A stretch of DNA of 64,000 bases from positions 62,001-126,000 of the IMG/VR virus record IMGVR_UViG_3300042326_002445; one strand, given 5' to 3'. The position numbers and the translations under genes are program-made. Below the pieces are notes generated by a model that worked only from the letters and a program-made list of their open reading frames with translations, was not told where the DNA came from and made no database searches. Shown here piece after piece: positions 9,498 through 28,520 of the stretch; the first letter of the stretch is position 1; every line of letters starts with the position of its first letter.

Positions 9498-10987
9498 TGG
9501 CATATATGGCTTCTTTATCTAATGAATATATGTTAGAATGTGGCGGATTTCCAGGGCCAATGGGTGACAAGTCTTTTATTTATAGAGAAAATGTATACTT
9601 TTTGGGAAAAATAGAAGTTTCTAATTCTTCTGCCGAGTATCTTGGTTTTCCAGGTTATTTTAAAATTTACGAAGCACCATTTGCTATTGTGTCTGGCTTT
9701 GACGCTAGCACTAATAATTTGCGTCTTGTATCAAATGGCTATAATCCTCCAGTTTTTAGAAATAGAGGTATCTGTAAGGACGATATAGTTGTTGGCGCAA
9801 AAAGTGGAGCTGTCAGATATGCTGCGCGTGATTGGAAAGTTTACACTGCAGATGGATCTTCTATAGAAAAATCAGGAATTAAAGAAATAGGGTACAACCC
9901 TACATATCATGATTTGTTTGATTTTTCTACTCATTCAGATGGCGCAATTTTTAATAGAATTTTTCCATTAAATAGAAATTTTTATAATAATACTATTTTT
10001 AATAATTTAGATCAAAAATTTTCTTGTGTAGCATTATTTGATAGAATTCCACTACCTGTTCCTTACAGTGCAAATAAGCACGGCTTTAGGCAGGCTGTGG
10101 CTGTAACTCCTATGCATGTATGTTTTTCTGAGCACGTTTGGCCATATATGGGATATGATTTATTATTTTATGACACCATTGAAAAAACTATTATCAATAG
10201 AAGAATAGTAAAAAAATTTAATTTTAACCTACCTAGTTATATTTTAAAGAATGAAGATAATGATAATATTCCATTTTTTCAAAATGATCAGGGAATAGGG
10301 TTGCTTGACAGTCCGCTTCCTCCAGGTGTTTTATTAGCTAATGTTCCAGATATAGCTTATAAGAAATATCCTGACGAAGCTACTAAAACAAGAAAAATTC
10401 CACTTGTAGCAATAGACTTGTCTGGACGTGGAATGTGTTGTAATGCGATATCTGGTTTTTTTAAAAATGACTCTTTTATTAATATATTAAATATAAAATC
10501 TAGTCAATTTATAGATGCATTAGCATATCAAAATGCATGTTTAGATACTCTTGGAGTTGGAGATTCTAGTACAATGTTTTTTACTTGTATTGGTAATCGT
10601 TTAATATATATGGGTTCTATAGTAACAGTATCAAATACGCTACATGGACTGAATGGAACATTTATAAATCAAGAAATTGGATATGGCAAAATAGATTTGT
10701 CTTTCTTTCATTATCCTGACAGAAATGGGACTTTATCTTCTAGTGTTGAAAATAGATATTTTCAAAATCAACTATATGGTACTTCCCTTTCTTTTTGGGC
10801 TAAAGTAGGAAATAGAGCTTTAAATTACATATTCACATCTCCTGATATTTGGGGTGAACCAATAGATCCATCATATGTGCCTGCAAGGATAAAAATTACT
10901 AATGATATAAATATTACAGAGTCTAATTCTTATTTAAATCTATCTAACGATAACCTAATAGATAGAAAAATTAAATTTATATCATGA
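9494..10987 (+). CDS. Putative trypsin/chymotrypsin-fold serine protease
   Basis: Triad-like motifs in the correct order: AVTPMHVCFSEH (His 10133), NDQGIGLLDSPLP (Asp 10286), GDSSTMFF...LIYMG (Ser 10565). SD AGGAG at 9486; ATGA overlaps with both neighbours. Confidence 0.55.
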   Translation: MMAYMASLSNEYMLECGGFPGPMGDKSFIYRENVYFLGKIEVSNSSAEYLGFPGYFKIYEAPFAIVSGFDASTNNLRLVSNGYNPPVFRNRGICKDDIVVGAKSGAVRYAARDWKVYTADGSSIEKSGIKEIGYNPTYHDLFDFSTHSDGAIFNRIFPLNRNFYNNTIFNNLDQKFSCVALFDRIPLPVPYSANKHGFRQAVAVTPMHVCFSEHVWPYMGYDLLFYDTIEKTIINRRIVKKFNFNLPSYILKNEDNDNIPFFQNDQGIGLLDSPLPPGVLLANVPDIAYKKYPDEATKTRKIPLVAIDLSGRGMCCNAISGFFKNDSFINILNIKSSQFIDALAYQNACLDTLGVGDSSTMFFTCIGNRLIYMGSIVTVSNTLHGLNGTFINQEIGYGKIDLSFFHYPDRNGTLSSSVENRYFQNQLYGTSLSFWAKVGNRALNYIFTSPDIWGEPIDPSYVPARIKITNDINITESNSYLNLSNDNLIDRKIKFIS

Positions 10988-13900
10988 TTAATTTTAGTAA
11001 ATGTTCACTGAATGGATGCAGCTTTAAGCTTTTATACGATCAGCAGTCTTCAATTTTAGAAGATCAGATATCTTATTTGGCAGTTAATTTTTTTAATTCT
11101 GATTCTTATTGGGTTCCTTACAAAACTAATTATCCATCTTTGTCAGATATTTCTATGAAATTGGGCAAAGTGTCTTTAGATGCTTCTGTAGCCGATACCT
11201 CTGAATATTCTTCTGGAAGCATTTCATTCTCAGTAGATATTAAAGATGAGGGAGATTATGTAGCTGCGTTTAAAGTTTCAAAAGAAAATGGGATTTCTAT
11301 ATGCTCATCTTTAACTATTTCTCATTCTTTGCTTCCTGGGACCAACACTACTTCTTACCTTTTTTACCCTGATAGATATGGGGTCTTTAGTGAAGTGCCT
11401 GTAAATCAAGATAATAAAATTTTTGATTTTCAGCATAATATGTCACAAATTGGACAAGACTCAGTGTGGATTACTATTGAATTTTCTGCTCTTGTAGCTG
11501 GTCGTTATATATTTAATATGAGTGTTGCAAGTAATGAGTCATTTGATTTTATTGATTTAGATACTTCAAATTTTATAGTTGAAGGTTTTACTATTTTTAA
11601 AAAGACACATTTTGATACTAGCGGTTTGTCTTTGAGAAATACCGCAAGTGTCAACTCCTCTACTTTTAGTTCTTATAGGGTAAATTCATTAGCAGAATCT
11701 CATCCATTATCATTTAATTCATTTTTGAATACCATTAAACAGGGTGAAGCAAGAATAATTGGTTTGTTTGGTCTTTATGAAGACAGCAAATTTTATTCTT
11801 TAGAGAAAAGTGTTTCTTTTAAACTTTCTGATTTTTCAGAAAATCCTAGATCTGTTATTTCGATTATACCTGGCGGTATATCAGCAGATGAAACATTATT
11901 AAATAAATTATGTGTTATTTTTAGTGAGCACTATAATAATAGTTTGTGGCATTTTTCTTATTCTGCAGATTCATCTGGAGTATCTGGTAAGACTTTTAAG
12001 TTAATGGGTGAAGATTTAGGAATACAGCAAAAAACTATTTCTTTAGATATTTTTTCATCAGATAATAAATATAGTAGTGAAGATTCAGGTGATAATTTTA
12101 CAAAAAACAAAGTTGTTATACAGCCGCCTGTTGGGGTTCCACTAGAAATAAGTAAAATTACAGATAATTCTATTTCAGAAAATTTAAAAGACAATTTTGC
12201 CTTGTTGTCAGATGATCGTGGTGAATATTATGCTCTGAATTTACCAGATAGACACCAATCATTTGTTTTAGATCATAGCGGAAGTATGTCTTGGTCAGAT
12301 GTAAGCGGTGAAAGATTTGGATTGATTAATGACATAGTTGACAAGTTTGAGCAAATATATCCTGGCAGTGTCAGCTATTCTTTGACAACATTCAAAGGCA
12401 CTCCAGTGATAGTGGAGTGGTTTGGTGCAATTGAAAATAATGTAGAAGACAGCAATGATCCAGATTCTGTGAGAACAGGATTTCTTCAAGGTAAATATAC
12501 AAACTTTAGAGGATGCCACATAGTAAGAAAGAAAGGTGTTGCTCCGTCTAGTCCTACTGATGGAGAAATTTTATTCAATGGTTTTGATAAAGTATTTTAT
12601 GATACTGGTCTAGAAGAATCAGTTGATTATTACTATAGTATTTATCCACTAGACAGTAATAATAGACTAGGCTCTCCTTCTATAATAAAAGCAAAAACAC
12701 GGTCAAACGAAATCGTAAAGGGTATAAAAAGCTTATCAGGCAAAGAGTTAATAGGTACTGGTATTCGTAGAGATGAGAGATCATTTTTTATATACCATAT
12801 GAACGAAGGCTCTGGCAGTAAAGTATATGATTTTTCTGGAAATAACTTACACCTTTTTATTCCTAGTGCTGCTAGAAACTCAATTATTTGGCTTGACGAG
12901 TCAGAGTCTCCTCCTGTAGACGCAGATTCTAATGTAGGAAAGGGATCTGGGCTTAGACTGACTGGAAGAAATAGCCTATGTTCTTGGACTGGAAGTCTTC
13001 AATCGGTTTTTAATGGTCTTAATATTTCATTTTGGTGTTATTTGTTTCAAAATATAGGTACTATAGAAAAAAACTTTATTTCTATACGTTCTGGAGAAAA
13101 ACTGTTTGAAATAAAGTTGGGAAGCGAAAAAATATCTGTCAGACTAAACGGAACTACTGTTGGTGTTTTATCATTTAGTTTTGAAGTTGAGTCATGGAAC
13201 CATGTATCTGTAAATATATCTGAAGATTGGAATACGTGTACTCTTTATGTAAACGGTGTGCCGGTTGATTCTTTTTTGCTTGGTTATTACAAAGAGCTAA
13301 TATCCTTGTTTTATTCTAATTACATTAATGCTATAGAGTTAGGAGATATTAGCGACAATGGCTTTAAGGGAAAAATTTCAGAAGTTTCATGCAGAAAAGA
13401 AAGTGTATCTAGTGCAGAAATAGAATATGAAAGCTCTTTTGTGCCTAAAGATAATGGCGACAGACTTTTACTGCTTTCTTGGTTTACTAATCTTGACAAC
13501 ACTGGACACAGAATTGTTATAAAATATAAACAAGAATCTGGTCCTCTTAGACTTTTAGATGAGGATATTGCAGGCCCAGCTAATTATGGTAGGTATCAAG
13601 GTGATTCTACTTTTGGTAACCCTCCAAATACTCCTCCTGGTAGAATCATTCAGTCCGACTTGAGAGCAAGAATTTGCTACGGGGACGACATCGGTCCAGT
13701 TTCTGCAGATGATGGAATAAGTGTTTTTGATTCTTACGTAGATGGTGATGTCAATGAGTGTGCATTTGCATACCAATTTAATTCATCAATAACAAAGAAA
13801 AATAGATTTTCAGTTGACATACCTGGATTTAGGAATTTCTTTAGAATATTTAGGATTAACGAAAATGGAGAGCAGAGCTATCCAGACGACAGTGGCTTAT

Positions 13901-16900
13901 TAGAATATACTCCAGCATCTTACGAAGACTCTTCTTTGCCAAATAATGGAGTGGGTGCAGTAGAAAATATCTCTGTCATTACTGGCAATAGAAAAATAAG
14001 ATTGAAATGGGATGTTCCGCAAAATAGCAATATAGAGTCTGTAATAATATATTATTCTGACGAGCCTATTGAAGAAGATTTCTTAGATCGCAGTGATAAT
14101 TATCCTCAAAAATATCCAGTGTTTGCTGGTATTAAAGAGCAAAATAGTTTTACTCATTTCTATGGAAGAGTAAGAGACTCTCAAAGAAAAAGTGCAGCAC
14201 CAGGCTCATTCCAAAGCACTTTGACTGCAGCAATAGCGGAATCTGAGGATGATTTAGATAATGGCAAAACAGCTTATTATGCAATAGTATCAAGAGATCA
14301 ATATGGAAGGATGTCAAGTCCTGTTTTTGTCAACGGAACTCCGAATGAGGAAAACAATGACTCCGGGATACCTCCAGAAAATATAATTGCACATCGTGCT
14401 TATGGAGTTGATTACAACACTATATCTTTAAGATGGATTAATCCAGTATCTGCTTCAAGGTTTTTTGATATTAATGGATGGCTAGATGATAATGTTGTTC
14501 TTTATTTTAGGGTGACAGATATTTATGGAAGAAGAATAGATGAGCAAGGTGATTTTCAAATCAAATTTAGATTTAATGATTTTTTAAATGGAATAGTTTT
14601 TACCAGTATATCTGGTGGAGATGACATAAAGCCAGCATCAATTGTTGGTTTATTTGATACAGAAAATGGATCTCCTGTAGTAGAAAATATCAGTTTTTCT
14701 GAACTTGTTTCCTATAATGTGAGCAATTTAAGTAATGGCTGGACAAGAATAACTGTTAACACAAATAATGCTTCTCTTTCTGATAGGAATTGGGCTGATG
14801 CAGTCTATACCGAAGTTTCAATGGTGTTTGTAAGAAATAATAATGTTGGTCAAGATCCTATATTTTCATTTTCTACTCAACCTATTAGGATATATTTAAA
14901 GCATCCTTTAAAATTTGATTTAATAGTTAACGACGCAGTTTTCTATAGTCCACAATCATACTCTATCTCTGGTCCCAACGCATCTGGTCCAGCTATATGC
15001 GATTATGTATATAATGGTGGAAACACTGACATAGGTGGAGAATCTTTGGTTTATGGTGCTTACAATGGCAGATCTTTACCGTATACTTTTGCTGTTAATG
15101 CATCATATAAAAATTCACCATTGCCAGTTGGTTCTACGGCAAATATAGATATATTTGAGGATTCCGAGCCTTCTTTTGCAAATACTATTGATGGTCCTGC
15201 TTTGCTTTTGCGTGGCGGTTTTTCTGGAATTGTTGGCGCCAATCCAGAATTAGGAACTCCTGCTTCTCAGGCAGGATTAAGTAATGAAGGTCTTATTGTA
15301 AGAAATTCCTATCCGTTTAGTACAACCATAAGTCCCATATCAGGACAGATTTTATTTGAAGATACCCCATCTGGTAAAGAGTCATTTGGAATTGGTGAAA
15401 TAAGAGTTCCAGGATCAAGATCATTTGGCAGAGTTTTTGCGACTGTAAGAGTCGGATTGTTCTATAGAACTCTTGGTTTTTATGTGGCATTTATTCCTAC
15501 TTTATATGTAAAAATAAATGCATCTGCTCCTAATCCTGATGGAGAGGACGTTGCAACTCAATACGCTTACGCATATATAGTTGATCCAAATAAATTTAGG
15601 ATTTCTATGAATGAAAATTTTAATGGAAATATATCCATAGAAAATTTTGCAAAACCTGTTCCAGATGGCACTCAAGTTTTGTGGCGTTTAACAAAAATGA
15701 GAAATGCAATAGATAGACCTTTTTATTCAACTTCTCAAAGAAGTGTTTCTGGAAATGCTGTTGACAAAACTATAGATGGTATATCTCAAAATGTTGTTTT
15801 TGGTCCAGCGGCAAATATAAATTCTAGTATCATTGAAGTAGACAGCGGTAATGTGTTGCTTATTCCAGAAGAATATGTTATTACAGCTACAGTTTCATAT
15901 GGAGGAGCTACAGCCTCTGCATCTCAAGCAGCTTGTATATACCCTGTTACTGTAAATGCAGATCAAGTTTTACCAGCTATTAGTCAAACTTCTTTTTACT
16001 TTGCTGGCAAATCATTTGGCAAAAATGTAAGTTATGTTCAATCAGTGTATGCAGACGGAGAAGATTTTGCAGTTTTAGAAATAATCAAAGATCCAAGACT
16101 TCTTCTTGGAAGCGATTCAGACATAAGAATAGAAGACATAAAAGCATTTTGTAAATGTTACAATGCTGATGGCACTAATGGCGGTGTAGAAAATGCTTAC
16201 TTAACAACCTTGCCAACCAATCAGATTATTGAGATTAAGGCAAATAAATTACCGGATTGTCAGGGTTCTGGATTGTCTTCTTATATACGTGGGAAGATAG
16301 AAATACTTCATGGATCAAGTTTAAATTATTATGTTGGTAGTAACGGAAAACTATTGGCATCATCAAATGAAATAGGTCTTGATTCTACTCTAACCGAAGT
16401 TAGAGAGTCTAATCGTGCAGATATAGTAGTCAGGGCAAATACTTTTATCCCATTAAAGTGGAAGTATTACACTAAGCTAGAGGCAGATCCAGGTCCGTTA
16501 ACACCAGTTTTTTGTAATTTTATAAATTCTGGTTTTGCAAGTTCAGTATATCATAATGTTACAATCTCTGCCTCTACCTCTGTAATCATAAACGGAATGG
16601 AAAAATCAATATTTAGTGATGGCGGAATTGCCTCCGGCAACCCACCTAAAATGCTTAAATTTATTGAACCTCTTTATTTGCAATTTGCATACATACTTAA
16701 AAATGGACAGAAAGTTAATGGCGAAGTGATAGAGGTTGATGGAAATAGTGTCTATGAATTTATATTTGCTATCAAATTTGCAGGACTTCCAGTACCAGAT
16801 GGCACAGAAGTAAAGTTTTATAAGTGTGGCAGTAATGAGCTAGTATTAAATTCAAATGTTGGTTATACTTTTACTAAAGAAGAGATAGGTCCATGGAGCT

Positions 16901-19900
16901 ATGGTCCGAATGGAGAGTTGGAAACTTCATCCATAAGCATGGTATCTATGAAAATATCTCCTATATCTCCAGTTAACCCAATCTTCGGATCATTGTTTGC
17001 TGAAATAAATTATGATAAAAATGGACAAGTATTTAGGCAAAGGGTGGCTGGGATAGATTTTGTTTACACTGGGGCTAATAGTTTGGCAGTTACTTCTAGC
17101 AATTTGCCAAACACAGGCTCTGGCGCAGTAAACACTGGAAATGATCCTGGAAATGGACAATTTGGCTCTGGATTGCCTTCTGGAGGTGGGTCTGCGGGTG
17201 GAAATGGCCAGTCTAATAACTTTGGTTCTATTGGGGGCGGAACTTCTGGCAGTCCTCCTGGATCAAATCCCGCTACATCTTTGTTGCCATTTCCTGAAAT
17301 ATTTGCAGAATTAGAAAATGCTACTTCTAGACTTTTGATAAATACTGCTTTTAGTAATGAGTGTTATATATATGATTTATTAGTTTCTGATGCAAGCTAC
17401 AAGTGGCGTAAAATTGCCAATATGAACCTTAGGCGAGCTATGCATGTCTCTGAATTTGTGTCTGGAAATCTTTATTCTATCGGAGGGCTAGTCGGATTTA
17501 CAAGTAGCGACACAAACGCAGATGCTACTGTTTTAGTAACAGACACATGCGAAAGATGGAATCCTTCAGAAAACAGGTGGACCACTGCAAGAAAGTGTCT
17601 GTCCAAGCGATTCGGGTGTCTTTCATGTGCAGACGATAGATTTATTTATTTAATAGGTGGTTTTGAAACAAAATTGAAAGGATCGATTTCTCCAAGTGGT
17701 CAAGCGGTTCAGTCGAGAGTTCCTTATGTAAGCAGAAGATTTGAAAGGTACGATACAATAACTAATACATGGCTTTCTATGGCTCCGATGCCAGTATTTG
17801 ACTTAAATGGCAATCAATTAGATATCGCTGCTGAAAATACATTGACTGACAGGATAGGTAATGATGATGTCAATTTTGAGCAATATGGCTGTGCTCTTGG
17901 AAAAGCATTTATTAAAAACAATAAAATTATTATTATTAATGGTGCAAGAAAAGTTGATGATAAATTAAATGTAGAAAAATATAATGATAAAATAATGGTA
18001 TACGACATAGGCACAAACACTTGGAGTGTAAGTGCAAATATTCCATCTAGCCTTGCATCTGAATTCTGTAGATTATATCCAATTGTGTGGGAAGAGAATG
18101 ACTCTGTTCACATATATGGCGGGTCTTCTTCTATTATTGAAAACGTAAATGCAGAAGTTGGAGATGAAGAATTTATAATAGAAAAAAATAGAAGTTTTGC
18201 TTTGCAAAATTCTTTTGGAATTCCTTTAGAAGATATAGTATATGGAGCCATATCTATAGAAAATATATATAGATCTGATTATCTTTTTGGTAACTTGCCA
18301 AAAGCAAGAGACCAAGTTTCTTTTGCTCATATTTATGGAGAGGGCGTATACCTGTTTGGCGGCAGAGTATTTGCTCAAAATGAAAGTCTTGGAACTAATG
18401 CCACTAGAACTGCAGAAAGAATATCGGAAGTAGACGAAGCTTATATAGTAGAAAATTTAGTAAAATCACCTTTTGGATTTAGCAATACTGGATGTACTAA
18501 TGACGGCAGTCGGTTGATATATATTACAGGCGGAACTACTACAAATCAATCTCCAGGATTTGTAAGATTAGAGATCGAGGCTTATGGAGAACAAACCGAG
18601 CAAATTAATACAGAAAGATTTAGTAGCATAGAGCCAGCAAATGCTACTGTGAGGCTTGATGGTTTTTCTGGAGTAGATTTAAAAATTAGTGCATATGATG
18701 ACGAGGGAGATTATGTAGTAGGAAATTTAGAAGTAGAAATTTCTGGTTTATTAGCTTATGGAACTGGAGATGACGAATTAGAAGGTGGAGCATCAATAGG
18801 TGGGATGCAGAGAGCTCCAACATTAAACAGAAGAAGAAAAAGAAAAGGTACTAGAGTATATCCAATAGTCTTAAATCCATACAGGGTAAATCTTTCTAAT
18901 GGGATTGGATATTCGCGACTTGAGGGAAGAAGCGAAGATGTGCTAAAGAGTCTCACAGAAATACAGGAAATATTAAACGCAGATTTGTCTGCTGACCAAG
19001 CAGTTTTAGGTACTGCTTCCGAATTACAGCTTAGGCAAGGAAGCGTTAGATTTCCTTATAGAATTAGTATAGTTGGTAGAGTGATTGATGATTTCTATTT
19101 TGGAAAGACTTCTTATGTATCTACTGAAGATCAGGAAGTACAACAAGAAGTTTTCTTACCAGAAAATGAGGTCACTGATGTAATCGCTGATGCCGGAGAC
19201 TTTGGTAGCGCAACAGTAATGCCTCCAATGCTGCCAGCTTATGCTAGTTCCTCTTCTCCTTTACCAATAGCAGACTATGGCCCTGTTTTAACATGCAGTG
19301 CAATAGGCGTTATAGGTCCAGTAGGTGACGTAGATTTGTTTGCTTTTATTCCACCAAAATCTGGGGTGTATACTATAACAATAGAGCAAAGAGGTTTTTC
19401 TCAACTTTTGCCAATGGTGTCTGTATTCAACGAGTCTCAATTTCCTTATCCAATTAACGGTACGGCATCTAACGAAATTAGATTTGATAATTTTGGCTAT
19501 TCTAGTGATGGGAGAACCGCAAACATAGAATTACTAAAGGATGTAACTTATTATTTCCAAATTTCTTCATATGCGGGAGCAGATAGTGCAGAAGTCAATA
19601 AAGTTGGTGCTTATAGGATAAGATTTACTATACCAATTGCAATAATACAAAATCAAGGCACAAGCAGCAGTAGCAGTAGTAGCTCTGGAAATAATTCAAG
19701 TAGCAGTTCAAGTAGTAATCAAAATTCTGGAGAAGTTGTATCTTTTAATATATTTGAATATGTTACGGAAAATACTATCGCAAATCTTAGTACTCCGTGG
19801 TCTTCTGTGCTAAGAGATTTCTATAATACTTATTTTAGATTTTTACTAGCAAATGGCGGCTATAATAGTCAGGCTTTACAGGTCGCCATAGATACTGTAA

Positions 19901-22881
19901 ACTCAATATCTTCTTGTCCTTTTAAGTGCCCATCTTGTGTTGAATCTACAGGCGGAAATGATGCATGCTCTGCAGCAAATTTTGAATGCACAGGATCTGA
20001 CAATACAACTTGCGTTACCATAATTGGTTTAGGAAATATATTATTGCCAAGTACTTCTAGTTCTTCGAGTTCAAGTAATTTTAATTCTTCTAGCAGTTCA
20101 TCAAATAATGTTTACGATCCTTATTCTGAATACTCTGATGGAAGTAATTTTGTAGAGCCATACAATCCAGATATCCCTCCTTTTGAGCTACCTCCTGCTG
20201 GCTCAAATGAATTAATAATAGAAGACATTCCATTTGAGACTCTATCAATTCCTGCTAGTTCAATTTTTTCAGGAGAAAATGCTTCATCTCTAAGAGAGGG
20301 AGATAGTCCAATAGTTCAATACTATTCTGATATTGATTGGATTCCAGAAATAAACACTGATTTATTTACTGGGTTAACTGCTTCTTATGATCTTAAAATG
20401 AAAGTCAGAAAAATTAAACAAAGTATTCCATTTGGCTCTTCTCCTATTTTTGATGGCATAAATGATGCGGCAAGATTAATAAAGTCAACTTTTGACTCAG
20501 ATCAAATAATAAAAAATATTCTCATTCTAAGTGACAATGATGAGAATACTAGTGGAATTTCTCCACTGCAAGTTATTGAAAATGTTAATGCTATTGACGG
20601 TTCAAGAAAAGTAAAAATAAATTCATTTAATATCAGTACTTTCTATCCAGTTACTGTTAGTGCTCAAGCTTCAAGGGCAAACATGTCTGGAGTTGGTGAA
20701 GTTGTGAAACAGACAGGTGGTTCTAATTTTGCCCTATTGTCATCTAGTTTACTTGATGAGGCTTCTGAATTTGCATTTACTGGCTCAGCTGGCTCAGCTG
20801 GTGCAGGCAAATTGTCTTTAACTCTTGATTTTGAAGAACAAATAATTATAAATTCTGTAAATCCAAATATAGAAATTGGAAAAGCAGATTTTATATCTTA
20901 TAAAATTGCTTATTCAAATGATGGTGAAAATTATACTTATATTCCAGAAGAATTTGACGCTGGTACCGCATGTCAGGTTAATGTAAAATCTAAATATTTA
21001 AAAATAGACTTTGAAGGCATAATAGATTTTGATAAGATAGATGAATATTTCTCAGCAGACCCATATGATCCATATAGTGAATCTATAAAAATTAGTAAAT
21101 ATGATTTATCAAAAATAAGAGGTATTAATTTAAATATTTCTGCAGCAGATGATAATTACATATATTTGGATAAAATCAGTCTATCATCCGCTCCACAACA
21201 AATTATTATATTTGTTAATTGGGAGGGTCCATCTGATTCTGAGATATCTGCTGGTGTTTCTACTTCTGATAGTGGTGACTGGAAAGATTACTCTCGTGAT
21301 GCTCAAAATGTAGCCATGGGTTCTGGCAAAGTAATTATACCAATAAGGTATAAAGATAAATTTAATGTTATACGTGAAGAGCTAGCTCAAATTAGTCCGT
21401 TTGTTTTTGAATTGCCTCACGGTTCTGTGCATAAAAATGCAGTGATTGCCATCTATAAAGACAATGGAGATTTACTAAATGAGTCAGAATATGCTGTAGA
21501 TAGAGATTTGGGTTTAATTAGAATGCAATATTCTATGTACGGAGAAAAGCTTTACGTTACTGTAGATGAAGAAAAAAGCTTAAAAATTGGAGTAAAAGCA
21601 TCTTTTGGTACAAAACCTGGTAATATATCTATAAGTAGTATAGGTTACATGCTAACAGTAAACGAAAATCTTACTCCAGTTAATGTCAATCAGCCACCAA
21701 TCGCCGTTAATGTGCGAATTAATCCACTGATAGTGTACCCGTACACTAATGTATATGTTTCTTATAGATATCTGGATCAAGATGGTGATGTTGAAGATGT
21801 AGATAAAAGAGTGATAAAATGGTATAAAAATGGCGTAGAGATTCCAGAGTTAATGAATATTTTATCATATAATGACTTGCATGATAGCGAGGATGTAACA
21901 TACTCATTCTATTATACTTCTAATTATGCAGAAATAGAAGCAATGTCTCCTGGGGTAACTGCAGAATTGCTTGCAAGTTTTGCTAATGAAAGAATATTTG
22001 AGCCAGGAGATCAGATTTATTTTACAGTTCAGGTGCATGATGGAGTGCAATTAAGTAACGCTTTCAGAAGTCCTACTGTAACGGTTTCAGATTATCCAGT
22101 TTCTCCATCTTCTATAACAATTAGATCTAGATACGCAAGTGCTGCAGATATTAAACTTACTACGGGAGGAGTTTTGGGGGGTGGAGGAAATGCTGCTGAT
22201 CCTGCTAATTTTGGTCAACTTGCTAATGAATTCACTAATAGAACAAGATTGTTTTTAGACTTTGATCTTTTTTCTCCAGCAGCATTTAATCTTGCGGTGG
22301 TCACGTGGTATGTGGTGGACAATGCTGGTAATATCATTACATTTAAATCAGGTAAAATATCGGATGTCCAATCTGGCATGTATTCAATAGGCCCATCTGA
22401 TATAAATATTTTTAATTTTGAAGCTGTTAAAATTGGACATCAGATTTATGCAGATTTGTTTATCCCAAGAAATGCAGCTCCTGGTATTTTAAATGACATA
22501 ACTATCAGAAGTAATACAGTAACAATCACCAATCTTGTTCCAAGAGCATCAAGCGTTGTATTGGAAAAAATAGTAGATGCTGGTACTGTTATATCTTATT
22601 GGAGATTTACTTACATGTTTGAAGATGAAGATGTTTATCAAAATGAGCCAGGACAATCGGATAACAGCACCATAAGGCTTTATAAGAAAACTCCAGCAGA
22701 AGATGTATTTACCTTAGAGACAAGAATTACAGATCCACTTAACTTCTTTATACCAAGTGATTATTACGATGAGGGTACGCAGATCTATTTAGAAGTAATA
22801 CCATTTGACAATGTTGCATATGGCGCTTCTGTAAAAAGTGAAATAGCGACTTGGACCAGGCCAAGTGGTCCTCCGCTGTAG
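10984..22881 (+). CDS. Giant (3965 aa) multidomain virion/adhesion protein: split vWA, FN3/Ig-like, LamG, Kelch propeller, PPC domain, Gly/Ser linkers
   Basis: FVLDHSGSM (12262-12288); YHMNEGSGSKVYDFSGNNLH LamG (~12790); Kelch repeats WRKIANMNLRRAMH...LYSIGG (~17400-18545); GVIGPVGDVDLFAF PPC (~19306); vWA second half GSSPIFDGI...ILILSDNDEN...TGG (~20430-20730). Confidence 0.65.
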   Translation: MINFSKCSLNGCSFKLLYDQQSSILEDQISYLAVNFFNSDSYWVPYKTNYPSLSDISMKLGKVSLDASVADTSEYSSGSISFSVDIKDEGDYVAAFKVSKENGISICSSLTISHSLLPGTNTTSYLFYPDRYGVFSEVPVNQDNKIFDFQHNMSQIGQDSVWITIEFSALVAGRYIFNMSVASNESFDFIDLDTSNFIVEGFTIFKKTHFDTSGLSLRNTASVNSSTFSSYRVNSLAESHPLSFNSFLNTIKQGEARIIGLFGLYEDSKFYSLEKSVSFKLSDFSENPRSVISIIPGGISADETLLNKLCVIFSEHYNNSLWHFSYSADSSGVSGKTFKLMGEDLGIQQKTISLDIFSSDNKYSSEDSGDNFTKNKVVIQPPVGVPLEISKITDNSISENLKDNFALLSDDRGEYYALNLPDRHQSFVLDHSGSMSWSDVSGERFGLINDIVDKFEQIYPGSVSYSLTTFKGTPVIVEWFGAIENNVEDSNDPDSVRTGFLQGKYTNFRGCHIVRKKGVAPSSPTDGEILFNGFDKVFYDTGLEESVDYYYSIYPLDSNNRLGSPSIIKAKTRSNEIVKGIKSLSGKELIGTGIRRDERSFFIYHMNEGSGSKVYDFSGNNLHLFIPSAARNSIIWLDESESPPVDADSNVGKGSGLRLTGRNSLCSWTGSLQSVFNGLNISFWCYLFQNIGTIEKNFISIRSGEKLFEIKLGSEKISVRLNGTTVGVLSFSFEVESWNHVSVNISEDWNTCTLYVNGVPVDSFLLGYYKELISLFYSNYINAIELGDISDNGFKGKISEVSCRKESVSSAEIEYESSFVPKDNGDRLLLLSWFTNLDNTGHRIVIKYKQESGPLRLLDEDIAGPANYGRYQGDSTFGNPPNTPPGRIIQSDLRARICYGDDIGPVSADDGISVFDSYVDGDVNECAFAYQFNSSITKKNRFSVDIPGFRNFFRIFRINENGEQSYPDDSGLLEYTPASYEDSSLPNNGVGAVENISVITGNRKIRLKWDVPQNSNIESVIIYYSDEPIEEDFLDRSDNYPQKYPVFAGIKEQNSFTHFYGRVRDSQRKSAAPGSFQSTLTAAIAESEDDLDNGKTAYYAIVSRDQYGRMSSPVFVNGTPNEENNDSGIPPENIIAHRAYGVDYNTISLRWINPVSASRFFDINGWLDDNVVLYFRVTDIYGRRIDEQGDFQIKFRFNDFLNGIVFTSISGGDDIKPASIVGLFDTENGSPVVENISFSELVSYNVSNLSNGWTRITVNTNNASLSDRNWADAVYTEVSMVFVRNNNVGQDPIFSFSTQPIRIYLKHPLKFDLIVNDAVFYSPQSYSISGPNASGPAICDYVYNGGNTDIGGESLVYGAYNGRSLPYTFAVNASYKNSPLPVGSTANIDIFEDSEPSFANTIDGPALLLRGGFSGIVGANPELGTPASQAGLSNEGLIVRNSYPFSTTISPISGQILFEDTPSGKESFGIGEIRVPGSRSFGRVFATVRVGLFYRTLGFYVAFIPTLYVKINASAPNPDGEDVATQYAYAYIVDPNKFRISMNENFNGNISIENFAKPVPDGTQVLWRLTKMRNAIDRPFYSTSQRSVSGNAVDKTIDGISQNVVFGPAANINSSIIEVDSGNVLLIPEEYVITATVSYGGATASASQAACIYPVTVNADQVLPAISQTSFYFAGKSFGKNVSYVQSVYADGEDFAVLEIIKDPRLLLGSDSDIRIEDIKAFCKCYNADGTNGGVENAYLTTLPTNQIIEIKANKLPDCQGSGLSSYIRGKIEILHGSSLNYYVGSNGKLLASSNEIGLDSTLTEVRESNRADIVVRANTFIPLKWKYYTKLEADPGPLTPVFCNFINSGFASSVYHNVTISASTSVIINGMEKSIFSDGGIASGNPPKMLKFIEPLYLQFAYILKNGQKVNGEVIEVDGNSVYEFIFAIKFAGLPVPDGTEVKFYKCGSNELVLNSNVGYTFTKEEIGPWSYGPNGELETSSISMVSMKISPISPVNPIFGSLFAEINYDKNGQVFRQRVAGIDFVYTGANSLAVTSSNLPNTGSGAVNTGNDPGNGQFGSGLPSGGGSAGGNGQSNNFGSIGGGTSGSPPGSNPATSLLPFPEIFAELENATSRLLINTAFSNECYIYDLLVSDASYKWRKIANMNLRRAMHVSEFVSGNLYSIGGLVGFTSSDTNADATVLVTDTCERWNPSENRWTTARKCLSKRFGCLSCADDRFIYLIGGFETKLKGSISPSGQAVQSRVPYVSRRFERYDTITNTWLSMAPMPVFDLNGNQLDIAAENTLTDRIGNDDVNFEQYGCALGKAFIKNNKIIIINGARKVDDKLNVEKYNDKIMVYDIGTNTWSVSANIPSSLASEFCRLYPIVWEENDSVHIYGGSSSIIENVNAEVGDEEFIIEKNRSFALQNSFGIPLEDIVYGAISIENIYRSDYLFGNLPKARDQVSFAHIYGEGVYLFGGRVFAQNESLGTNATRTAERISEVDEAYIVENLVKSPFGFSNTGCTNDGSRLIYITGGTTTNQSPGFVRLEIEAYGEQTEQINTERFSSIEPANATVRLDGFSGVDLKISAYDDEGDYVVGNLEVEISGLLAYGTGDDELEGGASIGGMQRAPTLNRRRKRKGTRVYPIVLNPYRVNLSNGIGYSRLEGRSEDVLKSLTEIQEILNADLSADQAVLGTASELQLRQGSVRFPYRISIVGRVIDDFYFGKTSYVSTEDQEVQQEVFLPENEVTDVIADAGDFGSATVMPPMLPAYASSSSPLPIADYGPVLTCSAIGVIGPVGDVDLFAFIPPKSGVYTITIEQRGFSQLLPMVSVFNESQFPYPINGTASNEIRFDNFGYSSDGRTANIELLKDVTYYFQISSYAGADSAEVNKVGAYRIRFTIPIAIIQNQGTSSSSSSSSGNNSSSSSSSNQNSGEVVSFNIFEYVTENTIANLSTPWSSVLRDFYNTYFRFLLANGGYNSQALQVAIDTVNSISSCPFKCPSCVESTGGNDACSAANFECTGSDNTTCVTIIGLGNILLPSTSSSSSSSNFNSSSSSSNNVYDPYSEYSDGSNFVEPYNPDIPPFELPPAGSNELIIEDIPFETLSIPASSIFSGENASSLREGDSPIVQYYSDIDWIPEINTDLFTGLTASYDLKMKVRKIKQSIPFGSSPIFDGINDAARLIKSTFDSDQIIKNILILSDNDENTSGISPLQVIENVNAIDGSRKVKINSFNISTFYPVTVSAQASRANMSGVGEVVKQTGGSNFALLSSSLLDEASEFAFTGSAGSAGAGKLSLTLDFEEQIIINSVNPNIEIGKADFISYKIAYSNDGENYTYIPEEFDAGTACQVNVKSKYLKIDFEGIIDFDKIDEYFSADPYDPYSESIKISKYDLSKIRGINLNISAADDNYIYLDKISLSSAPQQIIIFVNWEGPSDSEISAGVSTSDSGDWKDYSRDAQNVAMGSGKVIIPIRYKDKFNVIREELAQISPFVFELPHGSVHKNAVIAIYKDNGDLLNESEYAVDRDLGLIRMQYSMYGEKLYVTVDEEKSLKIGVKASFGTKPGNISISSIGYMLTVNENLTPVNVNQPPIAVNVRINPLIVYPYTNVYVSYRYLDQDGDVEDVDKRVIKWYKNGVEIPELMNILSYNDLHDSEDVTYSFYYTSNYAEIEAMSPGVTAELLASFANERIFEPGDQIYFTVQVHDGVQLSNAFRSPTVTVSDYPVSPSSITIRSRYASAADIKLTTGGVLGGGGNAADPANFGQLANEFTNRTRLFLDFDLFSPAAFNLAVVTWYVVDNAGNIITFKSGKISDVQSGMYSIGPSDINIFNFEAVKIGHQIYADLFIPRNAAPGILNDITIRSNTVTITNLVPRASSVVLEKIVDAGTVISYWRFTYMFEDEDVYQNEPGQSDNSTIRLYKKTPAEDVFTLETRITDPLNFFIPSDYYDEGTQIYLEVIPFDNVAYGASVKSEIATWTRPSGPPL
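17086..17280 (+). repeat. Gly/Asn/Ser-rich flexible linker
   Basis: GSGAVNTGNDPGNGQFGSGLPSGGGSAGGNGQSNNFGSIGGGTSGSPPGS. Confidence 0.8.
19663..19716 (+). repeat. Poly-Ser tract
   Basis: SSSSSSSSGNNSSSSSSS. Confidence 0.9.
20050..20103 (+). repeat. Poly-Ser tract
   Basis: STSSSSSSSNFNSSSSSS. Confidence 0.9.
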
Positions 22882-22903: not shown

Positions 22904-23629
22904 ATGAATCTCTTGATTGGCATATTGCAATACAACAAGTCGGCTGTTACCGCCAAGTGTATAACCTGTATAGAAAATTATACACATGATATAAATTATT
23001 CAATATATCTTTTAGATAATAATTCCAGCGATGGGTCATTTCAAGAAATTGTTAATTTTTGTAAAGATAAAAAAAATATTACAATTGAAAAAAGCGAAAC
23101 CAATACTGGAGTGATAGGCGGAAGAAATATGATATTTAATTTTTTTAAACAACAAAATCAATTTAGTCATATTATGTTTATAGACAATGATCAGTTTGTG
23201 AAAGAAAAATGGGCAGAAGGATATGTAGATTTATTTAATCTTCATAAGAAGTCTTTGTGTGGCATTGAGGCTTGGATTTTATCTAGTAATTTTACACCAT
23301 TAAGAAAATGTTCTTTAAAAGATAGTGGGTTTTCTTACGTAGGATGTGGAGGAATGATGATTTCGCGAGAAGCTTTTGACGAAATAGGAAGTTTTGACGA
23401 TAGTTTTAATCCCGCATACTTTGAAGATCCAGATTATTGTTTAAGAGCGTATGACAAAAAAATTCCTGTATTATGGAATAAAAATTCAAAGATAGATCAC
23501 ATGCCTCATCAAACTCTTGGTCAAAGATCATTGAATGCCTCTATGTCATTTCGAAAATCTCTTAATAATTTTAGAAACAAATGGAGAGGTAGATTTGGTG
23601 GTGGTATACTTTTTAGGAATGAAGCATGA
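22904..23629 (+). CDS. Glycosyltransferase family 2
   Basis: LLDNNSSDGS, NTGVIGGRN, FIDNDQ (DxD), GGMMISREAFDEIGSFDDSFNPAYFEDPDYCLRA. Confidence 0.9.
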   Translation: MNLLIGILQYNKSAVTAKCITCIENYTHDINYSIYLLDNNSSDGSFQEIVNFCKDKKNITIEKSETNTGVIGGRNMIFNFFKQQNQFSHIMFIDNDQFVKEKWAEGYVDLFNLHKKSLCGIEAWILSSNFTPLRKCSLKDSGFSYVGCGGMMISREAFDEIGSFDDSFNPAYFEDPDYCLRAYDKKIPVLWNKNSKIDHMPHQTLGQRSLNASMSFRKSLNNFRNKWRGRFGGGILFRNEA

Positions 23630-24702
23630 AAAAAGCATGTATTTTATCTAACCATATTTATCCATTTCACGTTGGTGGATCTGAAATGGTTATTAAAAAT
23701 GTAACAGAACATTTATTAGACAAAAACATATGTGTTGACGTATTCGGTTGGGATGTTTCAAAAGATACTGTACACAACGGAGTAAATATTTATAAAATGA
23801 ATATTGAAAAGATTAAATATATTCTTTTTCATTATGATGTTATAATTATATATAGTGATGCTTTTATAAATCTTATGCAAGTTTTGAAGTTAAATGTAGA
23901 ATTCAAAAAACGTATAATTATTTTTCCTGTTGGATTTACGGGAATGAGGTCGAGTTCTGCGCTAAAAGAAACAATGTTAAAAAATTTAACGCATATTAAT
24001 TTTGTATGTCATGATGAAAATTACGTTGATGCAATTTTCCTTAGGGAAAATAACATCCCATATTCGATTATCCCAAATGGCGTAAGTGAAAAAGAGTTTA
24101 AATTTACACCTAAAAATATATCTAATGGAGATATAAAAAATATCATTTGTGTGGCAAATACTTTTCCTAAAAAAGGACATGTTGAGCTTTTACAAGTTTG
24201 CGATATTTTATTAGAAAAATTAAAATTTAACTTACACATTTTTTGTCATACCCCGTCATGGGATGTTGGTAAGCGATTGCAAAATCAGCTTTGTCAATTT
24301 AGTAAAACAAAAAAGTATCCAGTATATTTTCATATAGATAAAGATCGTTCTGAGCTTATAAAAGGGCTAGAGTCTAGCGATTTGTTTTTATTCTGTTCTC
24401 TTAAGGAAGTTGCTCCTTTGTGCATTATAGAGAGTGCTGCTTCAGGTCTTCCTTGGGTGTCATTTAATGTTGGCAACGTTAGTAGTATTTCCGGTGGCAT
24501 TGTTAATAAGGATTGCTCTTATGACCATGCAGGTTACGTTATTCCAGAACAAAATTTGTTACATAATCATGTAAAAGTTATTTTAGAATTATTAAATGAT
24601 GATAAAAAGTACTCACAGTTATCTGAAGAAGGTGTAGATTTTGCTAAAAAAATAACTTGGAGCAATATAGCTAAACAGTATGCAAAAATTATACAAGATT
24701 AA
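23626..24702 (+). CDS. Glycosyltransferase family 4 (GT-B)
   Basis: GGSE N-terminal motif, IIPNGV, KKGH, SDLFLFCSLKEVAPLCIIESAASGLPWVSFNVG. Confidence 0.9.
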   Translation: MKKACILSNHIYPFHVGGSEMVIKNVTEHLLDKNICVDVFGWDVSKDTVHNGVNIYKMNIEKIKYILFHYDVIIIYSDAFINLMQVLKLNVEFKKRIIIFPVGFTGMRSSSALKETMLKNLTHINFVCHDENYVDAIFLRENNIPYSIIPNGVSEKEFKFTPKNISNGDIKNIICVANTFPKKGHVELLQVCDILLEKLKFNLHIFCHTPSWDVGKRLQNQLCQFSKTKKYPVYFHIDKDRSELIKGLESSDLFLFCSLKEVAPLCIIESAASGLPWVSFNVGNVSSISGGIVNKDCSYDHAGYVIPEQNLLHNHVKVILELLNDDKKYSQLSEEGVDFAKKITWSNIAKQYAKIIQD

Positions 24703-25471
24703 ATCAAGAATCACTCGCAGTAATCACGATGTATGTGTTATATGCTGTGCTCGTAATGGATCTGTATATGCAAAAGAGTCACTTGAATCTGTTATCTTAC
24801 AAAAGTCTTGTGCTTTTAAATTGATGCTACTGGATGATGCATCTGAAGATTCTACTTTAGATGTGTGTTCTCAAATTTTGTCTAGTAGTGAAGTGGATTA
24901 TGAAATATATCATGTCAAAAATAATCTAGGAGTTCCCTCTGCCAGAAATATTCTTATATCTCATTGTGATTGTCAATTTATTGCCATACACGACATAGAT
25001 GATATCATGATGCCATTTAGATTATTTTTTCAAATTAATTTTTTAAAACAATTTTCAGATGTTCATGCTGTTGGCGGTCATGCGTATAAAATAGATAGTC
25101 AAGGCAACTTTATAGACACAATGTCTTATCCCCCAAGAGATAATGCCGATATACTCAATATGTTGCCAGGAAGGGTTAATCCGATGATTGATCCCACCGT
25201 AATGATGAGATTACATTCTTTTCAAAAAATGAATGGTTATTCTGAAAATGAAAATTTAAGACTGGCGCAAGATTTTGATTTATGGATTAGAATGTGTAAA
25301 AGTGGTATGAGACTAGCAAATATTCAAGGTCCTCTCACAATTTATAGAGTCTCAGATTCTGGATTGACTGTTAGTAAAAAAAATGACATGATAAAAGCTC
25401 ATGTATACGTTCAATCTATTCACAAATCTTTTTTAGAACAAATTAGGAGCATAAATGGCAAAAGCAAATAA
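24680..25471 (+). CDS. Glycosyltransferase family 2
   Basis: LLDDASEDST, NLGVPSARN, IAIHDIDD, AQDFDLWIR. Confidence 0.9.
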   Translation: MQKLYKIKSRITRSNHDVCVICCARNGSVYAKESLESVILQKSCAFKLMLLDDASEDSTLDVCSQILSSSEVDYEIYHVKNNLGVPSARNILISHCDCQFIAIHDIDDIMMPFRLFFQINFLKQFSDVHAVGGHAYKIDSQGNFIDTMSYPPRDNADILNMLPGRVNPMIDPTVMMRLHSFQKMNGYSENENLRLAQDFDLWIRMCKSGMRLANIQGPLTIYRVSDSGLTVSKKNDMIKAHVYVQSIHKSFLEQIRSINGKSK

Positions 25472-28303: not shown

Positions 28304-28520
28304 GGGAAGAACGTCTGGTCCAGTAGATGGTTTTGGCGATTCTGGATTGCCACATTTTAATAAAAATGTTTCTTATCCATCCCTTGAGTTGAGTGGAATG
28401 GATGTTAAGATAAATAAAAATAACCGGATGAAAAAAAGAAGAATATATCAACTTGGCTTAATTATGCCGTGCCAAGAAAATGACGATGAATGCAAAGATG
28501 ATGAAGCTGAAAGTAGATAA
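28296..28520 (+). CDS. Small hypothetical protein
   Basis: Fills the gap between coupled genes; no motif recognised. Confidence 0.4.
   Translation: MGKGRTSGPVDGFGDSGLPHFNKNVSYPSLELSGMDVKINKNNRMKKRRIYQLGLIMPCQENDDECKDDEAESR

What the first reader, a model, noticed from the sequence alone, without database searches (positions are those of the whole stretch)
12256..20735. vWA domain apparently split by a ~2,700-residue insertion
Seen: the first half (FVLDHSGSMSWSD...RFGLINDIVDKF...SYSLTTF, MIDAS DxSxS at 12271) and the missing second half (FGSSPIFDGINDAARLI...ILILSDNDEN...KINSFNI...EVVKQTGGSNF, 20431-20730) are ~8 kb apart, and neither half is complete alone. Known: vWA adhesins tolerate arm insertions after the early strands, but these are normally far shorter. 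Inference: FN3/LamG/Kelch/PPC modules loop out of one reconstituted MIDAS domain, giving a clasp-like or processing-dependent architecture.
Basis: partly seen in the sequence, partly recalled or inferred. Interest (0 to 1): 0.65.

Follow-up and report, generated by a model that had tools for sequence, protein, structure and literature searches.

The report
Split vWA domain in giant phage protein
A 3,965-residue protein of an uncultivated giant phage carries one metal-binding vWA domain written in two complementary pieces about 2,600 residues apart, and in related phages the two pieces sit on two separate proteins, so the domain probably works as a clasp that joins distant parts or separate chains.

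Summary
One ORF (10984-22881, 3,965 aa) of a 224-kb virus record carries the N-terminal third of a vWA domain (aa 405-500, DxSxS at 430-434). The rest of the domain lies at aa 3119-3270, with the MIDAS Ser loop at 3151-3153 and Asp 3184. About 2,620 residues lie between them (FN3, long beta-rich region, Kelch propeller, Cys-rich module, Ser/Gly linkers).

A profile of the second piece retrieves ordinary contiguous Pfam vWA proteins. The joined pieces align end to end with them (184 columns, 98.4%). An AlphaFold model of the second piece has only three strands and matches the C-terminal ~110 residues of vWA structures, starting at the MIDAS Thr loop.

All 68 full-length relatives keep both pieces, with inserts of about 1,500-2,900 aa. 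All five MIDAS residues are invariant or nearly so. The record holds exactly one copy of each piece.

In about 30 further clusters the gene appears cut into two genes beside the Kelch domain, which puts the pieces on different polypeptides. Two loci confirm this at DNA level.

Physical reassembly is inferred only; the one co-fold allowed gave no verdict. I rate it a new variant of a known domain, moderately to highly interesting.

The parts
10984..22881 (+). Giant ORF, 3,965 aa (P0001), carrying both vWA pieces
   Evidence: Single open frame with no ORF of 100 aa or more on the other strand. Eight collinear full-length homologs of 47-76% identity come from independent samples.
12196..12483 (+). 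vWA N-piece, aa 405-500: beta-hairpin, betaA (423-431), alpha1, betaB (463-471), loop, short helix (493-501)
   Evidence: Pfam VWA_2 profile positions 3-51/107. AF2 model pLDDT is about 80. hhalign places it on columns 14-71 of a contiguous vWA profile. It is among the best-conserved 50-aa blocks of the protein (0.62-0.66 identity).
12271..12285 (+). MIDAS motif D430-H-S432-G-S434
   Evidence: D, G and the second S are invariant and the first S is at least 90% conserved in 63 first pieces with mean column identity 31%.
12484..20337 (+). Intervening array, aa 501-3118 (about 2,620 aa): FN3, long conserved beta-rich region, Gly/Ser linker, Kelch propeller, further modules, Ser-rich linkers, Cys-rich module
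   Evidence: The length of this array in 68 relatives is about 1,500-2,900 aa.
12511..12696 (+). FN3 domain (aa 510-571) directly after the N-piece
   Evidence: AF2 strands 129-190 of the model. Almost all top Foldseek PDB hits are fibronectin type III domains, prob 0.99-1.00.
17092..17298 (+). Gly/Ser/Asn-rich linker (aa 2037-2105) before the Kelch propeller. It corresponds to one gene-fission point in relatives.
   Evidence: Composition scan. L007 and the P0054/P0057/P0059 type start their second gene at the Kelch domain.
17344..17868 (+). Kelch beta-propeller (Pfam-supported part, aa 2121-2295; the propeller probably runs on to about aa 2550)
   Evidence: Kelch_6 E 1.5e-9, Kelch_1 E 3.5e-8 and the ATRN/LZTR1 propeller E 2.3e-12. 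PDB Kelch hits reach E 4e-10.
19633..19755 (+). Ser-rich linker (aa 2884-2924)
   Evidence: Composition scan.
20020..20148 (+). Ser-rich linker (aa 3013-3055) after a six-Cys module (aa 2978-3010)
   Evidence: AF2 gives pLDDT below 50 for aa 3040-3116.
20338..20793 (+). vWA C-piece, aa 3119-3270: helix, MIDAS Ser loop, then alpha-betaD-alpha-betaE-alpha-alpha-betaF-alpha
   Evidence: AF2 pLDDT is 80-95 and the model has three strands only. VIA-align: 33 PDB chains reach Z 8 or more, and nearly all of the top 50 entries are vWA domains (TFIIH p44 Z 8.9, rmsd 2.2 A over 101 residues; ITIH1/4; integrin alphaM 207-318; alpha2 219-335; vWF A1), always their C-terminal part. hhalign places it on columns 83-180 of the contiguous vWA profile.
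20434..20442 (+). G3151-S-S3153, the loop equivalent to the MIDAS Gly-x-Thr
   Evidence: G and the second S are invariant in 91 second pieces. Model residue 112 aligns with alphaM residue 207, so S3153 falls on T209 (the alphaM numbering is from my own knowledge).
20533..20535 (+). D3184, the MIDAS Asp at the end of betaD (LSDNDEN; TDGEEN in P0009)
   Evidence: Invariant in 91 sequences. Canonical TDG motif in relative P0009.
20800..20997 (+). Discoidin-like (F5/8 type C) module after the C-piece, weak
   Evidence: Pfam PF00754 E 0.0023, 18.5 bits, below the cut-off.
22904..25471 (+). Three glycosyltransferase genes (GT2, GT1/GT4, GT2) directly downstream. This is context, conserved in relatives.
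   Evidence: Pfam and PHROGs hits. The same order follows the homologous gene in L003 and L005.

Best explanation
The gene encodes a giant, modular surface protein of an uncultivated jumbo phage with a T4-like replication module. It is most likely a virion fibre or adhesin. Within it, a single metal-binding vWA domain is written in two pieces.

The N-piece (aa 405-500) supplies the central strand betaA with the DxSxS loop, helix alpha1 and strand betaB. The C-piece (aa 3119-3270) supplies the Ser loop that replaces the MIDAS Thr, strands betaD-betaF with the MIDAS Asp, and the remaining helices.

In the folded protein the two pieces pack into one alpha/beta sandwich with one complete five-residue metal site (D430, S432, S434, S3153, D3184). 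The domain then works as a joint. It ties the N-terminal part to the C-terminal part, while about 2,620 residues of FN3, beta-rich, Kelch and Cys-rich modules lie between the two connections.

In many relatives the gene has been cut on either side of the Kelch propeller. There the same joint would hold two separate polypeptides together non-covalently.

Shown here: the homology, complementarity, incompleteness and conservation of the pieces, and the two-gene forms. Inferred: physical reassembly, the clasp role, and virion or adhesin function.
For: 1. Complementary homology.
- The first piece matches Pfam VWA_2 positions 3-51 only.
- The second-piece profile retrieves Pfam-certified contiguous vWA proteins in their second half.
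- An HMM of eight such proteins hits P0001 at 426-484 (HMM 20-75) and 3143-3204 (HMM 81-143), colinear and without overlap.
- The joined pieces align end to end with that profile: 184 columns, 98.4%.

2. Structure.
- The AF2 model of the C-piece is a confident three-stranded alpha/beta half.
- It superposes on the C-terminal ~110 residues of vWA structures, from the MIDAS Thr loop onward: Z up to 8.9, rmsd about 2 A, with nearly all of the top 50 entries being vWA.
- The N-piece model has beta1-alpha1-beta2 and then goes into an FN3.

3. Selection.
- All five MIDAS positions are invariant or at least 90% conserved over 63 and 91 sequences whose mean column identity is 31% and 25%.
- Both pieces are among the most conserved blocks of the protein.

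4. Pairing.
- All 68 full-length relatives carry both pieces, in this order.
- The 224-kb record holds exactly one of each.

5. Natural fission.
- In L005 the first piece is in a 2,173-aa gene and the second in the next gene (1,048 aa). The junction is TAA-C-ATG and the genes are in different frames.
- In L007 the genes are 1,241 aa and 1,493 aa with a TAATG overlap.
- Gene calls show the same layout for P0054, P0057 and P0059.
- Thirty clusters have this form, at several places in the tree, and the MIDAS residues of their second pieces are still invariant.
Against: - The direct co-folding test of the two pieces gave ipSAE 0.09 and 0.07, with an uncertain fold of the partner. The tool states this is neither support nor evidence against.
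- The first piece alone is only weakly recognised (hhalign 75.7%; PDB profile hits E 0.4-1).
- No structure or model of the reunited domain exists.
- The AF2 model of the N-piece shows a preceding beta-hairpin that might cover part of the open sheet.
- Virion location is not shown. There is no PHROG hit and no relative in cultured phages.
Confidence: 0.65

Rival explanations
1. The pieces do reunite, but between different copies of the protein. The N-piece of one chain pairs with the C-piece of another, a domain swap. The split vWA would then be an oligomerisation or chain-linking device for a multimeric fibre, not an intramolecular loop closure.
For: The two-gene relatives show that pairing in trans must be possible if pairing happens at all. 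Phage fibres are usually oligomers (my own knowledge). About 2,620 residues of folded modules between the pieces make intra- and inter-chain pairing topologically equivalent.
Against: Nothing here discriminates cis from trans.
Confidence: 0.15
2. The two pieces are relics of an ancient vWA that was torn apart. They no longer pair. Each is now stabilised by its own neighbours (the beta-hairpin and FN3 for the first, flanking modules for the second) and has a function of its own.
For: Co-fold score was 0.09 (the tool says this is not evidence). Both pieces fold with fair confidence on their own in AF2. Gene fission between them is tolerated many times.
Against: A three-stranded half sandwich with an open central edge, and a DxSxS loop without its Thr/Asp partners, have no known independent function. 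Invariance of all five MIDAS residues in both pieces over more than 60 divergent sequences, two-gene forms included, is hard to explain unless they form one site. No family member has lost one piece while keeping the other within a complete one-chain protein.
Confidence: 0.15
3. Artefact or chance. Either the ORF is an assembly chimera, or the second stretch only looks like a vWA by coincidence.
For: Single-sequence searches of the second piece find nothing.
Against: Collinear homologs of full length come from independent Logan, ENA and JGI assemblies. Profile, profile-profile and structural matches all fall in the correct register.
Confidence: 0.02

Closest known systems
Canonical vWA / integrin I domain with MIDAS (Pfam PF00092, PF13519; e.g. 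integrin alphaM I domain, PDB 1JLM)
   Same: Same secondary-structure order once the pieces are joined. The DxSxS, Thr(Ser) and Asp metal ligands are at the expected spacing. The C-piece model superposes on alphaM 207-318, alpha2 219-335, TFIIH p44, ITIH1/4 and vWF A1.
   Different: The domain is not contiguous. About 2,620 residues (about 1,500-2,900 in relatives) lie between betaC/alpha2 and the helix before the MIDAS Thr loop. In about 30 clusters the two parts are on different polypeptides. Ser replaces the MIDAS Thr. The Pfam gathering score is not reached.
Pilus-tip adhesins RrgA and GBS104 (vWA D3 domain with two inserted arms; review PMC7893114)
   Same: A bacterial-world vWA with MIDAS that tolerates insertions inside the fold and serves adhesion.
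   Different: Those arms are short hairpin or loop elements that shape a binding cradle. Here the insert is a chain of whole domains roughly ten or more times the size of the host domain, and it can be cut by a gene boundary. No sortase or isopeptide context was seen.
SMC / Rad50 ABC ATPase heads (my own knowledge)
   Same: One nucleotide- or metal-binding alpha/beta domain is made from an N-terminal and a C-terminal piece. These meet after the chain runs out and back over hundreds of residues.
   Different: There the insert is an antiparallel coiled coil with a hinge, not an array of globular modules. The fold and chemistry are unrelated to vWA.
Complement C3 nested and two-chain domains (CUB split by the TED insert; MG6 built from beta- and alpha-chain residues) (my own knowledge)
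   Same: A host domain is interrupted by a whole inserted domain, and a domain is completed by residues from two polypeptides.
   Different: The insert is about 300 aa there. The two chains arise by proteolysis of one precursor, not from two genes. The fold is different.
Integrin beta-subunit betaI domain nested in the hybrid domain (my own knowledge)
   Same: A vWA-type domain takes part in a nested domain architecture.
   Different: There the vWA is the guest inserted into another domain. Here the vWA is the host that is split.

Membership tests
vWA domain superfamily (PF00092 / PF13519) | Significant match to the family profile over the whole domain | tested here: not met
   Pfam matches only profile positions 3-51/107 (VWA_2, 19.5-23.5 bits, cut-off 27) and 4-52/174 (VWA, E 0.04). 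The second piece gets no Pfam hit alone. This is as expected for a domain cut in two, but the curated threshold is not reached.
vWA domain superfamily (PF00092 / PF13519) | Homology of both pieces to complementary parts of bona fide vWA domains | tested here: met
   The second-piece profile finds contiguous proteins that pass the Pfam VWA cut-offs (P0119 34.7 bits, P0145 36.0, P0128 29.3, and others). hhalign gives columns 14-71 and 83-180, and 6-196 for the joined pieces at 98.4%.
vWA domain superfamily (PF00092 / PF13519) | MIDAS ligands DxSxS ... T ... D | tested here: met
   D430, S432, S434, S3153 (Ser in place of Thr) and D3184. All are invariant or at least 90% conserved in 63 and 91 sequences. 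The register was confirmed by structural alignment to integrin I domains.
vWA domain superfamily (PF00092 / PF13519) | Six-stranded alpha/beta (Rossmann-like) sandwich formed by the sequence | tested here: inconclusive
   The C-piece model gives betaD-betaF plus helices matching vWA structures (Z 8.9). The N-piece model gives betaA-alpha1-betaB. The co-fold of the two pieces gave no verdict, and the joined sequence could not be handed to the folding tool.
vWA domain superfamily (PF00092 / PF13519) | Domain encoded as one contiguous stretch | tested here: not met
   About 2,620 aa lie between the pieces here and about 1,500-2,900 aa in 68 relatives. The pieces are on separate genes in L005 and L007.
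Gram-positive pilus-tip vWA adhesins (RrgA / GBS104 type) | Short inserted arms within the vWA; Ig-like isopeptide domains; sortase signal | not tested
   No such domains appeared in the Pfam scan and no dedicated search was made. The phage context and the size of the insert argue against membership.
Phage tail fibre / virion adhesin | Match to a known virion protein family or location in a structural gene module | tested here: not met
   No PHROG family matched and there is no relative in 50,697 cultured-phage records. Neighbours are another giant modular protein (RCC1, pectate-lyase-like, dockerin), glycosyltransferases and replication genes. The adhesin role is inferred from module content only.

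The most novel reading that the evidence does not exclude
The split vWA is a natural protein-complementation clasp. Two half-domains, each unfoldable alone, snap together around a shared metal ion. This would assemble giant phage surface proteins from distant segments or from two separate gene products, making assembly metal-dependent. It would also let evolution cut and rejoin the gene freely inside the loop.
Probability: 0.45. Interest if true: 0.75.

Novelty: new variant of a known kind. Interest (0 to 1): 0.6.

Why it matters
vWA/MIDAS domains are among the best-studied adhesion modules, and they are treated as compact, contiguous units. Here one is interrupted by more than ten times its own length, and in sister lineages it is divided between two genes.

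If the halves reassemble, three things follow.
- This would be among the largest domain insertions I know of.
- It would be a naturally occurring two-piece MIDAS domain, a ready-made metal-dependent heterodimerisation module.
- It would give a new principle for how giant phage surface proteins are put together.

It also matters for annotation. Half-domains fall below Pfam thresholds, so this family of over 100 clusters of 2,000-5,000-aa phage proteins goes unannotated as vWA-bearing. The natural two-gene variants make the idea directly testable by co-expression.

Tried and rejected
- Complex prediction on the two pieces, with 10-row alignments: no verdict (ipSAE 0.09 and 0.07, partner fold uncertain). 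This is not used for or against.
- Single-sequence Pfam and PDB searches of the second piece found nothing.
- PDB profile searches of the 10-row alignments gave only weak hits, though in the right register: TRAP vWA E 0.1 and complement C2 E 0.8 for the second piece; ITIH4 and PilB vWA E about 1 for the first.
- PHROGs on the giant protein: no family.
- Megablast and tblastn against cultured phages: no match.
- The search for related loci in viral contigs and genome contigs: no relatives. Alignment A3 was too diverse to give patterns.
- Foldseek on the N-piece model is dominated by the adjoining FN3, so it says nothing about the half-vWA.
- ESM Atlas look-alikes of the N-terminal 410 aa (CBM6/35-like, 0.80) and the C-terminal 696 aa (viral He_PIG Ig-like, 0.78) are below the level the tool calls reliable. 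They are leads only.
- Literature searches found no description of a split or interrupted vWA.
- Stop-codon recoding and frameshifting were considered as explanations of the two-gene forms and rejected. The junctions are ordinary TAA-C-ATG and TAATG gene boundaries in different frames, and they differ from lineage to lineage.
- Coevolution analysis between the pieces was considered and not run, because 68 pairs are too few.
Full report
**Setting.** The window is bases 62001-126000 of a 223,646-base IMG/VR virus record that CheckV rates 55% complete. Almost all ORFs are on the + strand, GC is about 33% and GC skew is positive throughout. Downstream lie a T4-like replication module: DnaB-like helicase, DNA polymerase, UvsX-like recombinase, Dda-like helicase, clamp loader and clamp. 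So this is a large uncultivated phage.

The finding lies wholly inside one ORF, 10984-22881, of 3,965 aa (P0001). No ORF of 100 aa or more lies on the opposite strand.

**Checking the observation.** The second stretch (20431-20730) is aa 3150-3249.

- Pfam finds VWA_2 only at aa 427-476, matched to profile positions 3-51 of 107. The E-value is 1.6e-3 in the whole protein and 8.7e-5 (23.5 bits, cut-off 27) in the excised piece. PF00092 matches positions 4-52 of 174.
- So only the N-terminal part of the family model is matched, and the sequence then runs into something else.
- As a single sequence, the second stretch hits nothing in Pfam or the PDB.

**Relatives.** A word-indexed search found nine long homologs. 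Eight are collinear over their full length at 47-76% identity and come from Logan, ENA and JGI assemblies. That rules out an assembly chimera. Both stretches are among the best-conserved 50-aa blocks of the protein: 0.62-0.71 identity against about 0.5 on average. The two distant homologs, P0009 (30%) and P0010 (26%), also keep both stretches. P0009 even has the canonical TDGEEN in the second one.

**Is the second stretch the missing part of a vWA?** I built alignments of the first (A1) and second (A2) pieces.

- A PDB profile search with A2 gave weak hits in the correct register: TRAP vWA 87-154, E 0.1; complement C2 vWA, E 0.8.
- The exhaustive HMMER search of 1.84 billion representatives with A2 returned 143 proteins.
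- Most are giants of 2,200-5,030 aa. The list also holds small proteins of 190-310 aa.
- Pfam certifies these small proteins as ordinary contiguous vWA domains above the gathering cut-off (P0119 34.7 bits, P0145 36.0, P0128 29.3, P0138 28.9, P0110 28.8, and others).
- In them A2 matches the second half and A1 the first half, only 9-55 residues apart.
- An HMM built from eight of these small proteins hits P0001 twice, colinearly and without overlap: aa 426-484 on HMM 20-75 and aa 3143-3204 on HMM 81-143.
- Profile-profile comparison (68 paired giants against the eight small vWA proteins) places the first pieces on columns 14-71 (75.7%, E 2.4e-5) and the second pieces on columns 83-180 (97.8%, E 1e-12).
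- The two pieces joined in silico align end to end with columns 6-196 of 228. There are 184 aligned columns and only a 12-column gap at the junction, at 98.4%.

Together the pieces make exactly one vWA, with nothing doubled and nothing missing.

**Structure of the pieces.** AlphaFold2 with 91 rows on aa 3040-3292 leaves 3040-3116 disordered and folds 3119-3270 with pLDDT 80-95. The order is helix, loop (PFGSS), helix, strand, helix, strand, two helices, strand, helix, so there are three strands only.

- Foldseek's best hits are vWA domains: TFIIH p44/p34, ITIH4, BatB, ITIH1.
- VIA-align gives Z up to 8.9 (rmsd 2.2 A over 101 residues), and nearly all of the top 50 entries are vWA domains.
- In every case the aligned part is the C-terminal ~110 residues of the target: integrin alphaM 207-318, alpha2 219-335, p44 141-241, ITIH1 365-476.
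- Model residue 112 (G3151) falls on alphaM 207. By the well-known alphaM numbering (D140, S142, S144, T209, D242; my own knowledge), S3153 takes the place of T209. D3184, 31 residues later, takes that of D242.

AlphaFold2 with 63 rows on aa 382-586 gives a beta-hairpin, betaA (423-431), alpha1, betaB (463-471), a loop, a short helix (493-501) and then an FN3 domain (510-571). Foldseek confirms the FN3. Neither piece is a complete domain, and neither is completed by its immediate neighbours.

**Conservation of the metal site.** Across 63 first pieces (mean column identity 31%), D430, G433 and S434 are invariant, together with W437 and D439, and S432 is at least 90% conserved. Across 91 second pieces (25%), G3151, S3153 and D3184 are invariant. 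A five-residue site whose ligands sit in two pieces and are all frozen over this divergence is the strongest indirect argument that the pieces form one functional site. The 224-kb record contains exactly one first piece and one second piece, both in this ORF.

**Variable inserts and natural fission.** In 68 relatives with both pieces in one chain, the distance between the pieces is about 1,500 to 2,900 aa. The N-terminal extension before the first piece varies from about 20 to about 2,170 aa. No member with a short insert was found.

About 30 clusters of roughly 1,000-aa or 1,500-aa proteins start with Met and carry only the second piece.

- **L005.** A 2,173-aa gene (3478-9999) carries the first piece (aa 41-130, E 1.4e-25) and modules homologous to P0001 376-2382. 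The next gene (10001-13147, P0019, 1,048 aa) carries the second piece (225-349, E 2.6e-38) and the homolog of P0001 3091-3909. The junction reads TAA-C-ATG and the genes are in different frames.
- **L007.** A 1,241-aa gene carries the first piece (198-261, E 1.4e-15). The overlapping next gene (TAATG; P0069, 1,493 aa) starts with the Kelch propeller and carries the second piece (769-892).
- **Other contigs.** Gene calls for P0054, P0057 and P0059 show the same two-gene layout with yet other junctions: 3 nt apart in frame, an 8-nt overlap, and 2 nt apart.

So these are real gene boundaries and not recoded stops or sequencing errors. The cuts map to the two sides of the Kelch propeller; one of them corresponds to the Gly/Ser/Asn-rich linker at aa 2037-2105 of P0001.

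On a tree of 96 second pieces (149 columns, weakly resolved) the two-gene forms cluster but occur at several places. Well-supported branches force at least five changes for the Kelch-start form. Covalent continuity between the two pieces is therefore dispensable, yet the MIDAS residues of the second pieces stay invariant in the two-gene forms as well.

**Direct test of reassembly.** The tool's verdict is 'no answer' and must not be counted either way. Reassembly therefore remains an inference.

**Most likely mechanism.** The two pieces pack into one alpha/beta sandwich: betaA of the N-piece next to betaD of the C-piece, as in every vWA. There is one complete MIDAS.

From the known topology of I domains (my own knowledge), the chain leaves after betaC/alpha2 and returns with the helix that leads up to the Thr loop. 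All four connections (in, out to the FN3, back from the insert, out to the discoidin-like module) then lie away from the metal face, which stays free for a ligand.

The domain then acts as a clasp. In one-chain members it closes about 2,620 residues of modules into a loop, or links neighbouring chains. In two-gene members it holds the two proteins together.

The module content suggests a virion fibre or adhesin. It includes FN3, Kelch, a weak discoidin match, LamG in relatives and weak CBM-like and Ig-like leads. The protein has no obvious signal peptide. Its neighbour is a 2,587-aa protein with RCC1 repeats, a pectate-lyase-like fold and a dockerin, and three glycosyltransferase genes follow in conserved synteny. 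None of this is shown: no PHROG matched and there is no cultured relative.

**Rivals.**
- Pairing between chains (domain swap) is a variant I cannot separate from intra-chain closure.
- A 'relic' reading, in which the pieces no longer pair, is hard to square with the frozen metal ligands and with the strict co-occurrence of the pieces. It is not excluded.
- Chance and artefact are excluded.

**Comparison with what is known.**
- As a fold and a metal site this is a vWA domain. As an architecture it departs from every vWA I know or could find.
- Full-text searches found no split or interrupted vWA.
- The nearest case is the pilus-tip adhesins RrgA/GBS104, which have two short arms inserted into the vWA (PMC7893114).
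- Analogies from my own knowledge: SMC/Rad50 heads (two pieces reunited across a long coiled coil), and complement C3 (CUB split by the TED domain; MG6 built from two chains).
- I file it as a new variant of a known kind.

**Verdict.** The two-gene relatives add an unexpected and testable twist. Interest 0.6.

Noticed in passing
window 35192-38489 (+): The DNA polymerase is in two overlapping ORFs (35192-36544 and 36537-38489). Both hit phrog_405 on consecutive profile parts (33-435 and 425-944 of 1190). This is a split or frameshifted polymerase gene.
   Followed up: no
window 1734-9497 (+): A second giant protein (2,587 aa) lies just upstream. It has RCC1 repeats (E 1.5e-52), a pectate-lyase-like domain and a dockerin type I module. 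Relatives have other giant fn3 / FG-GAP / LamG proteins at this position.
   Followed up: partly
window 22904-25471 (+); L003 3164-6859; L005 13147-15736: Three glycosyltransferase genes (GT2, GT1/GT4, GT2) directly follow the giant gene, in the same order in relatives. They might glycosylate the Ser-rich linkers of the giant proteins, but this is speculation.
   Followed up: partly
window 17092-17298, 19633-19755, 20020-20148: Long Gly/Ser/Asn-rich low-complexity linkers (aa 2037-2105, 2884-2924, 3013-3055), and a six-Cys module (aa 2978-3010) that is also conserved in P0009.
   Followed up: partly
L003 10388-13164: In a relative, the ResIII-type helicase downstream of the cluster is about 1,000 aa long and has a faint intein-splicing Pfam hit. 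The window's homolog (28480-29997) is 505 aa with no intein hit.
   Followed up: no
protein P0074 (2,693 aa): One hit of the second-piece profile shows 12 separate matched stretches to profile positions 2-66. This may be a repeat protein built from the MIDAS-loop part, or a low-complexity artefact.
   Followed up: no
proteins P0036, P0086, P0088, P0097 (4,625-5,031 aa): A sub-clade carries about 2,000 extra residues before the first vWA piece. On the tree it is sister to the main clade of Kelch-start two-gene forms.
   Followed up: partly
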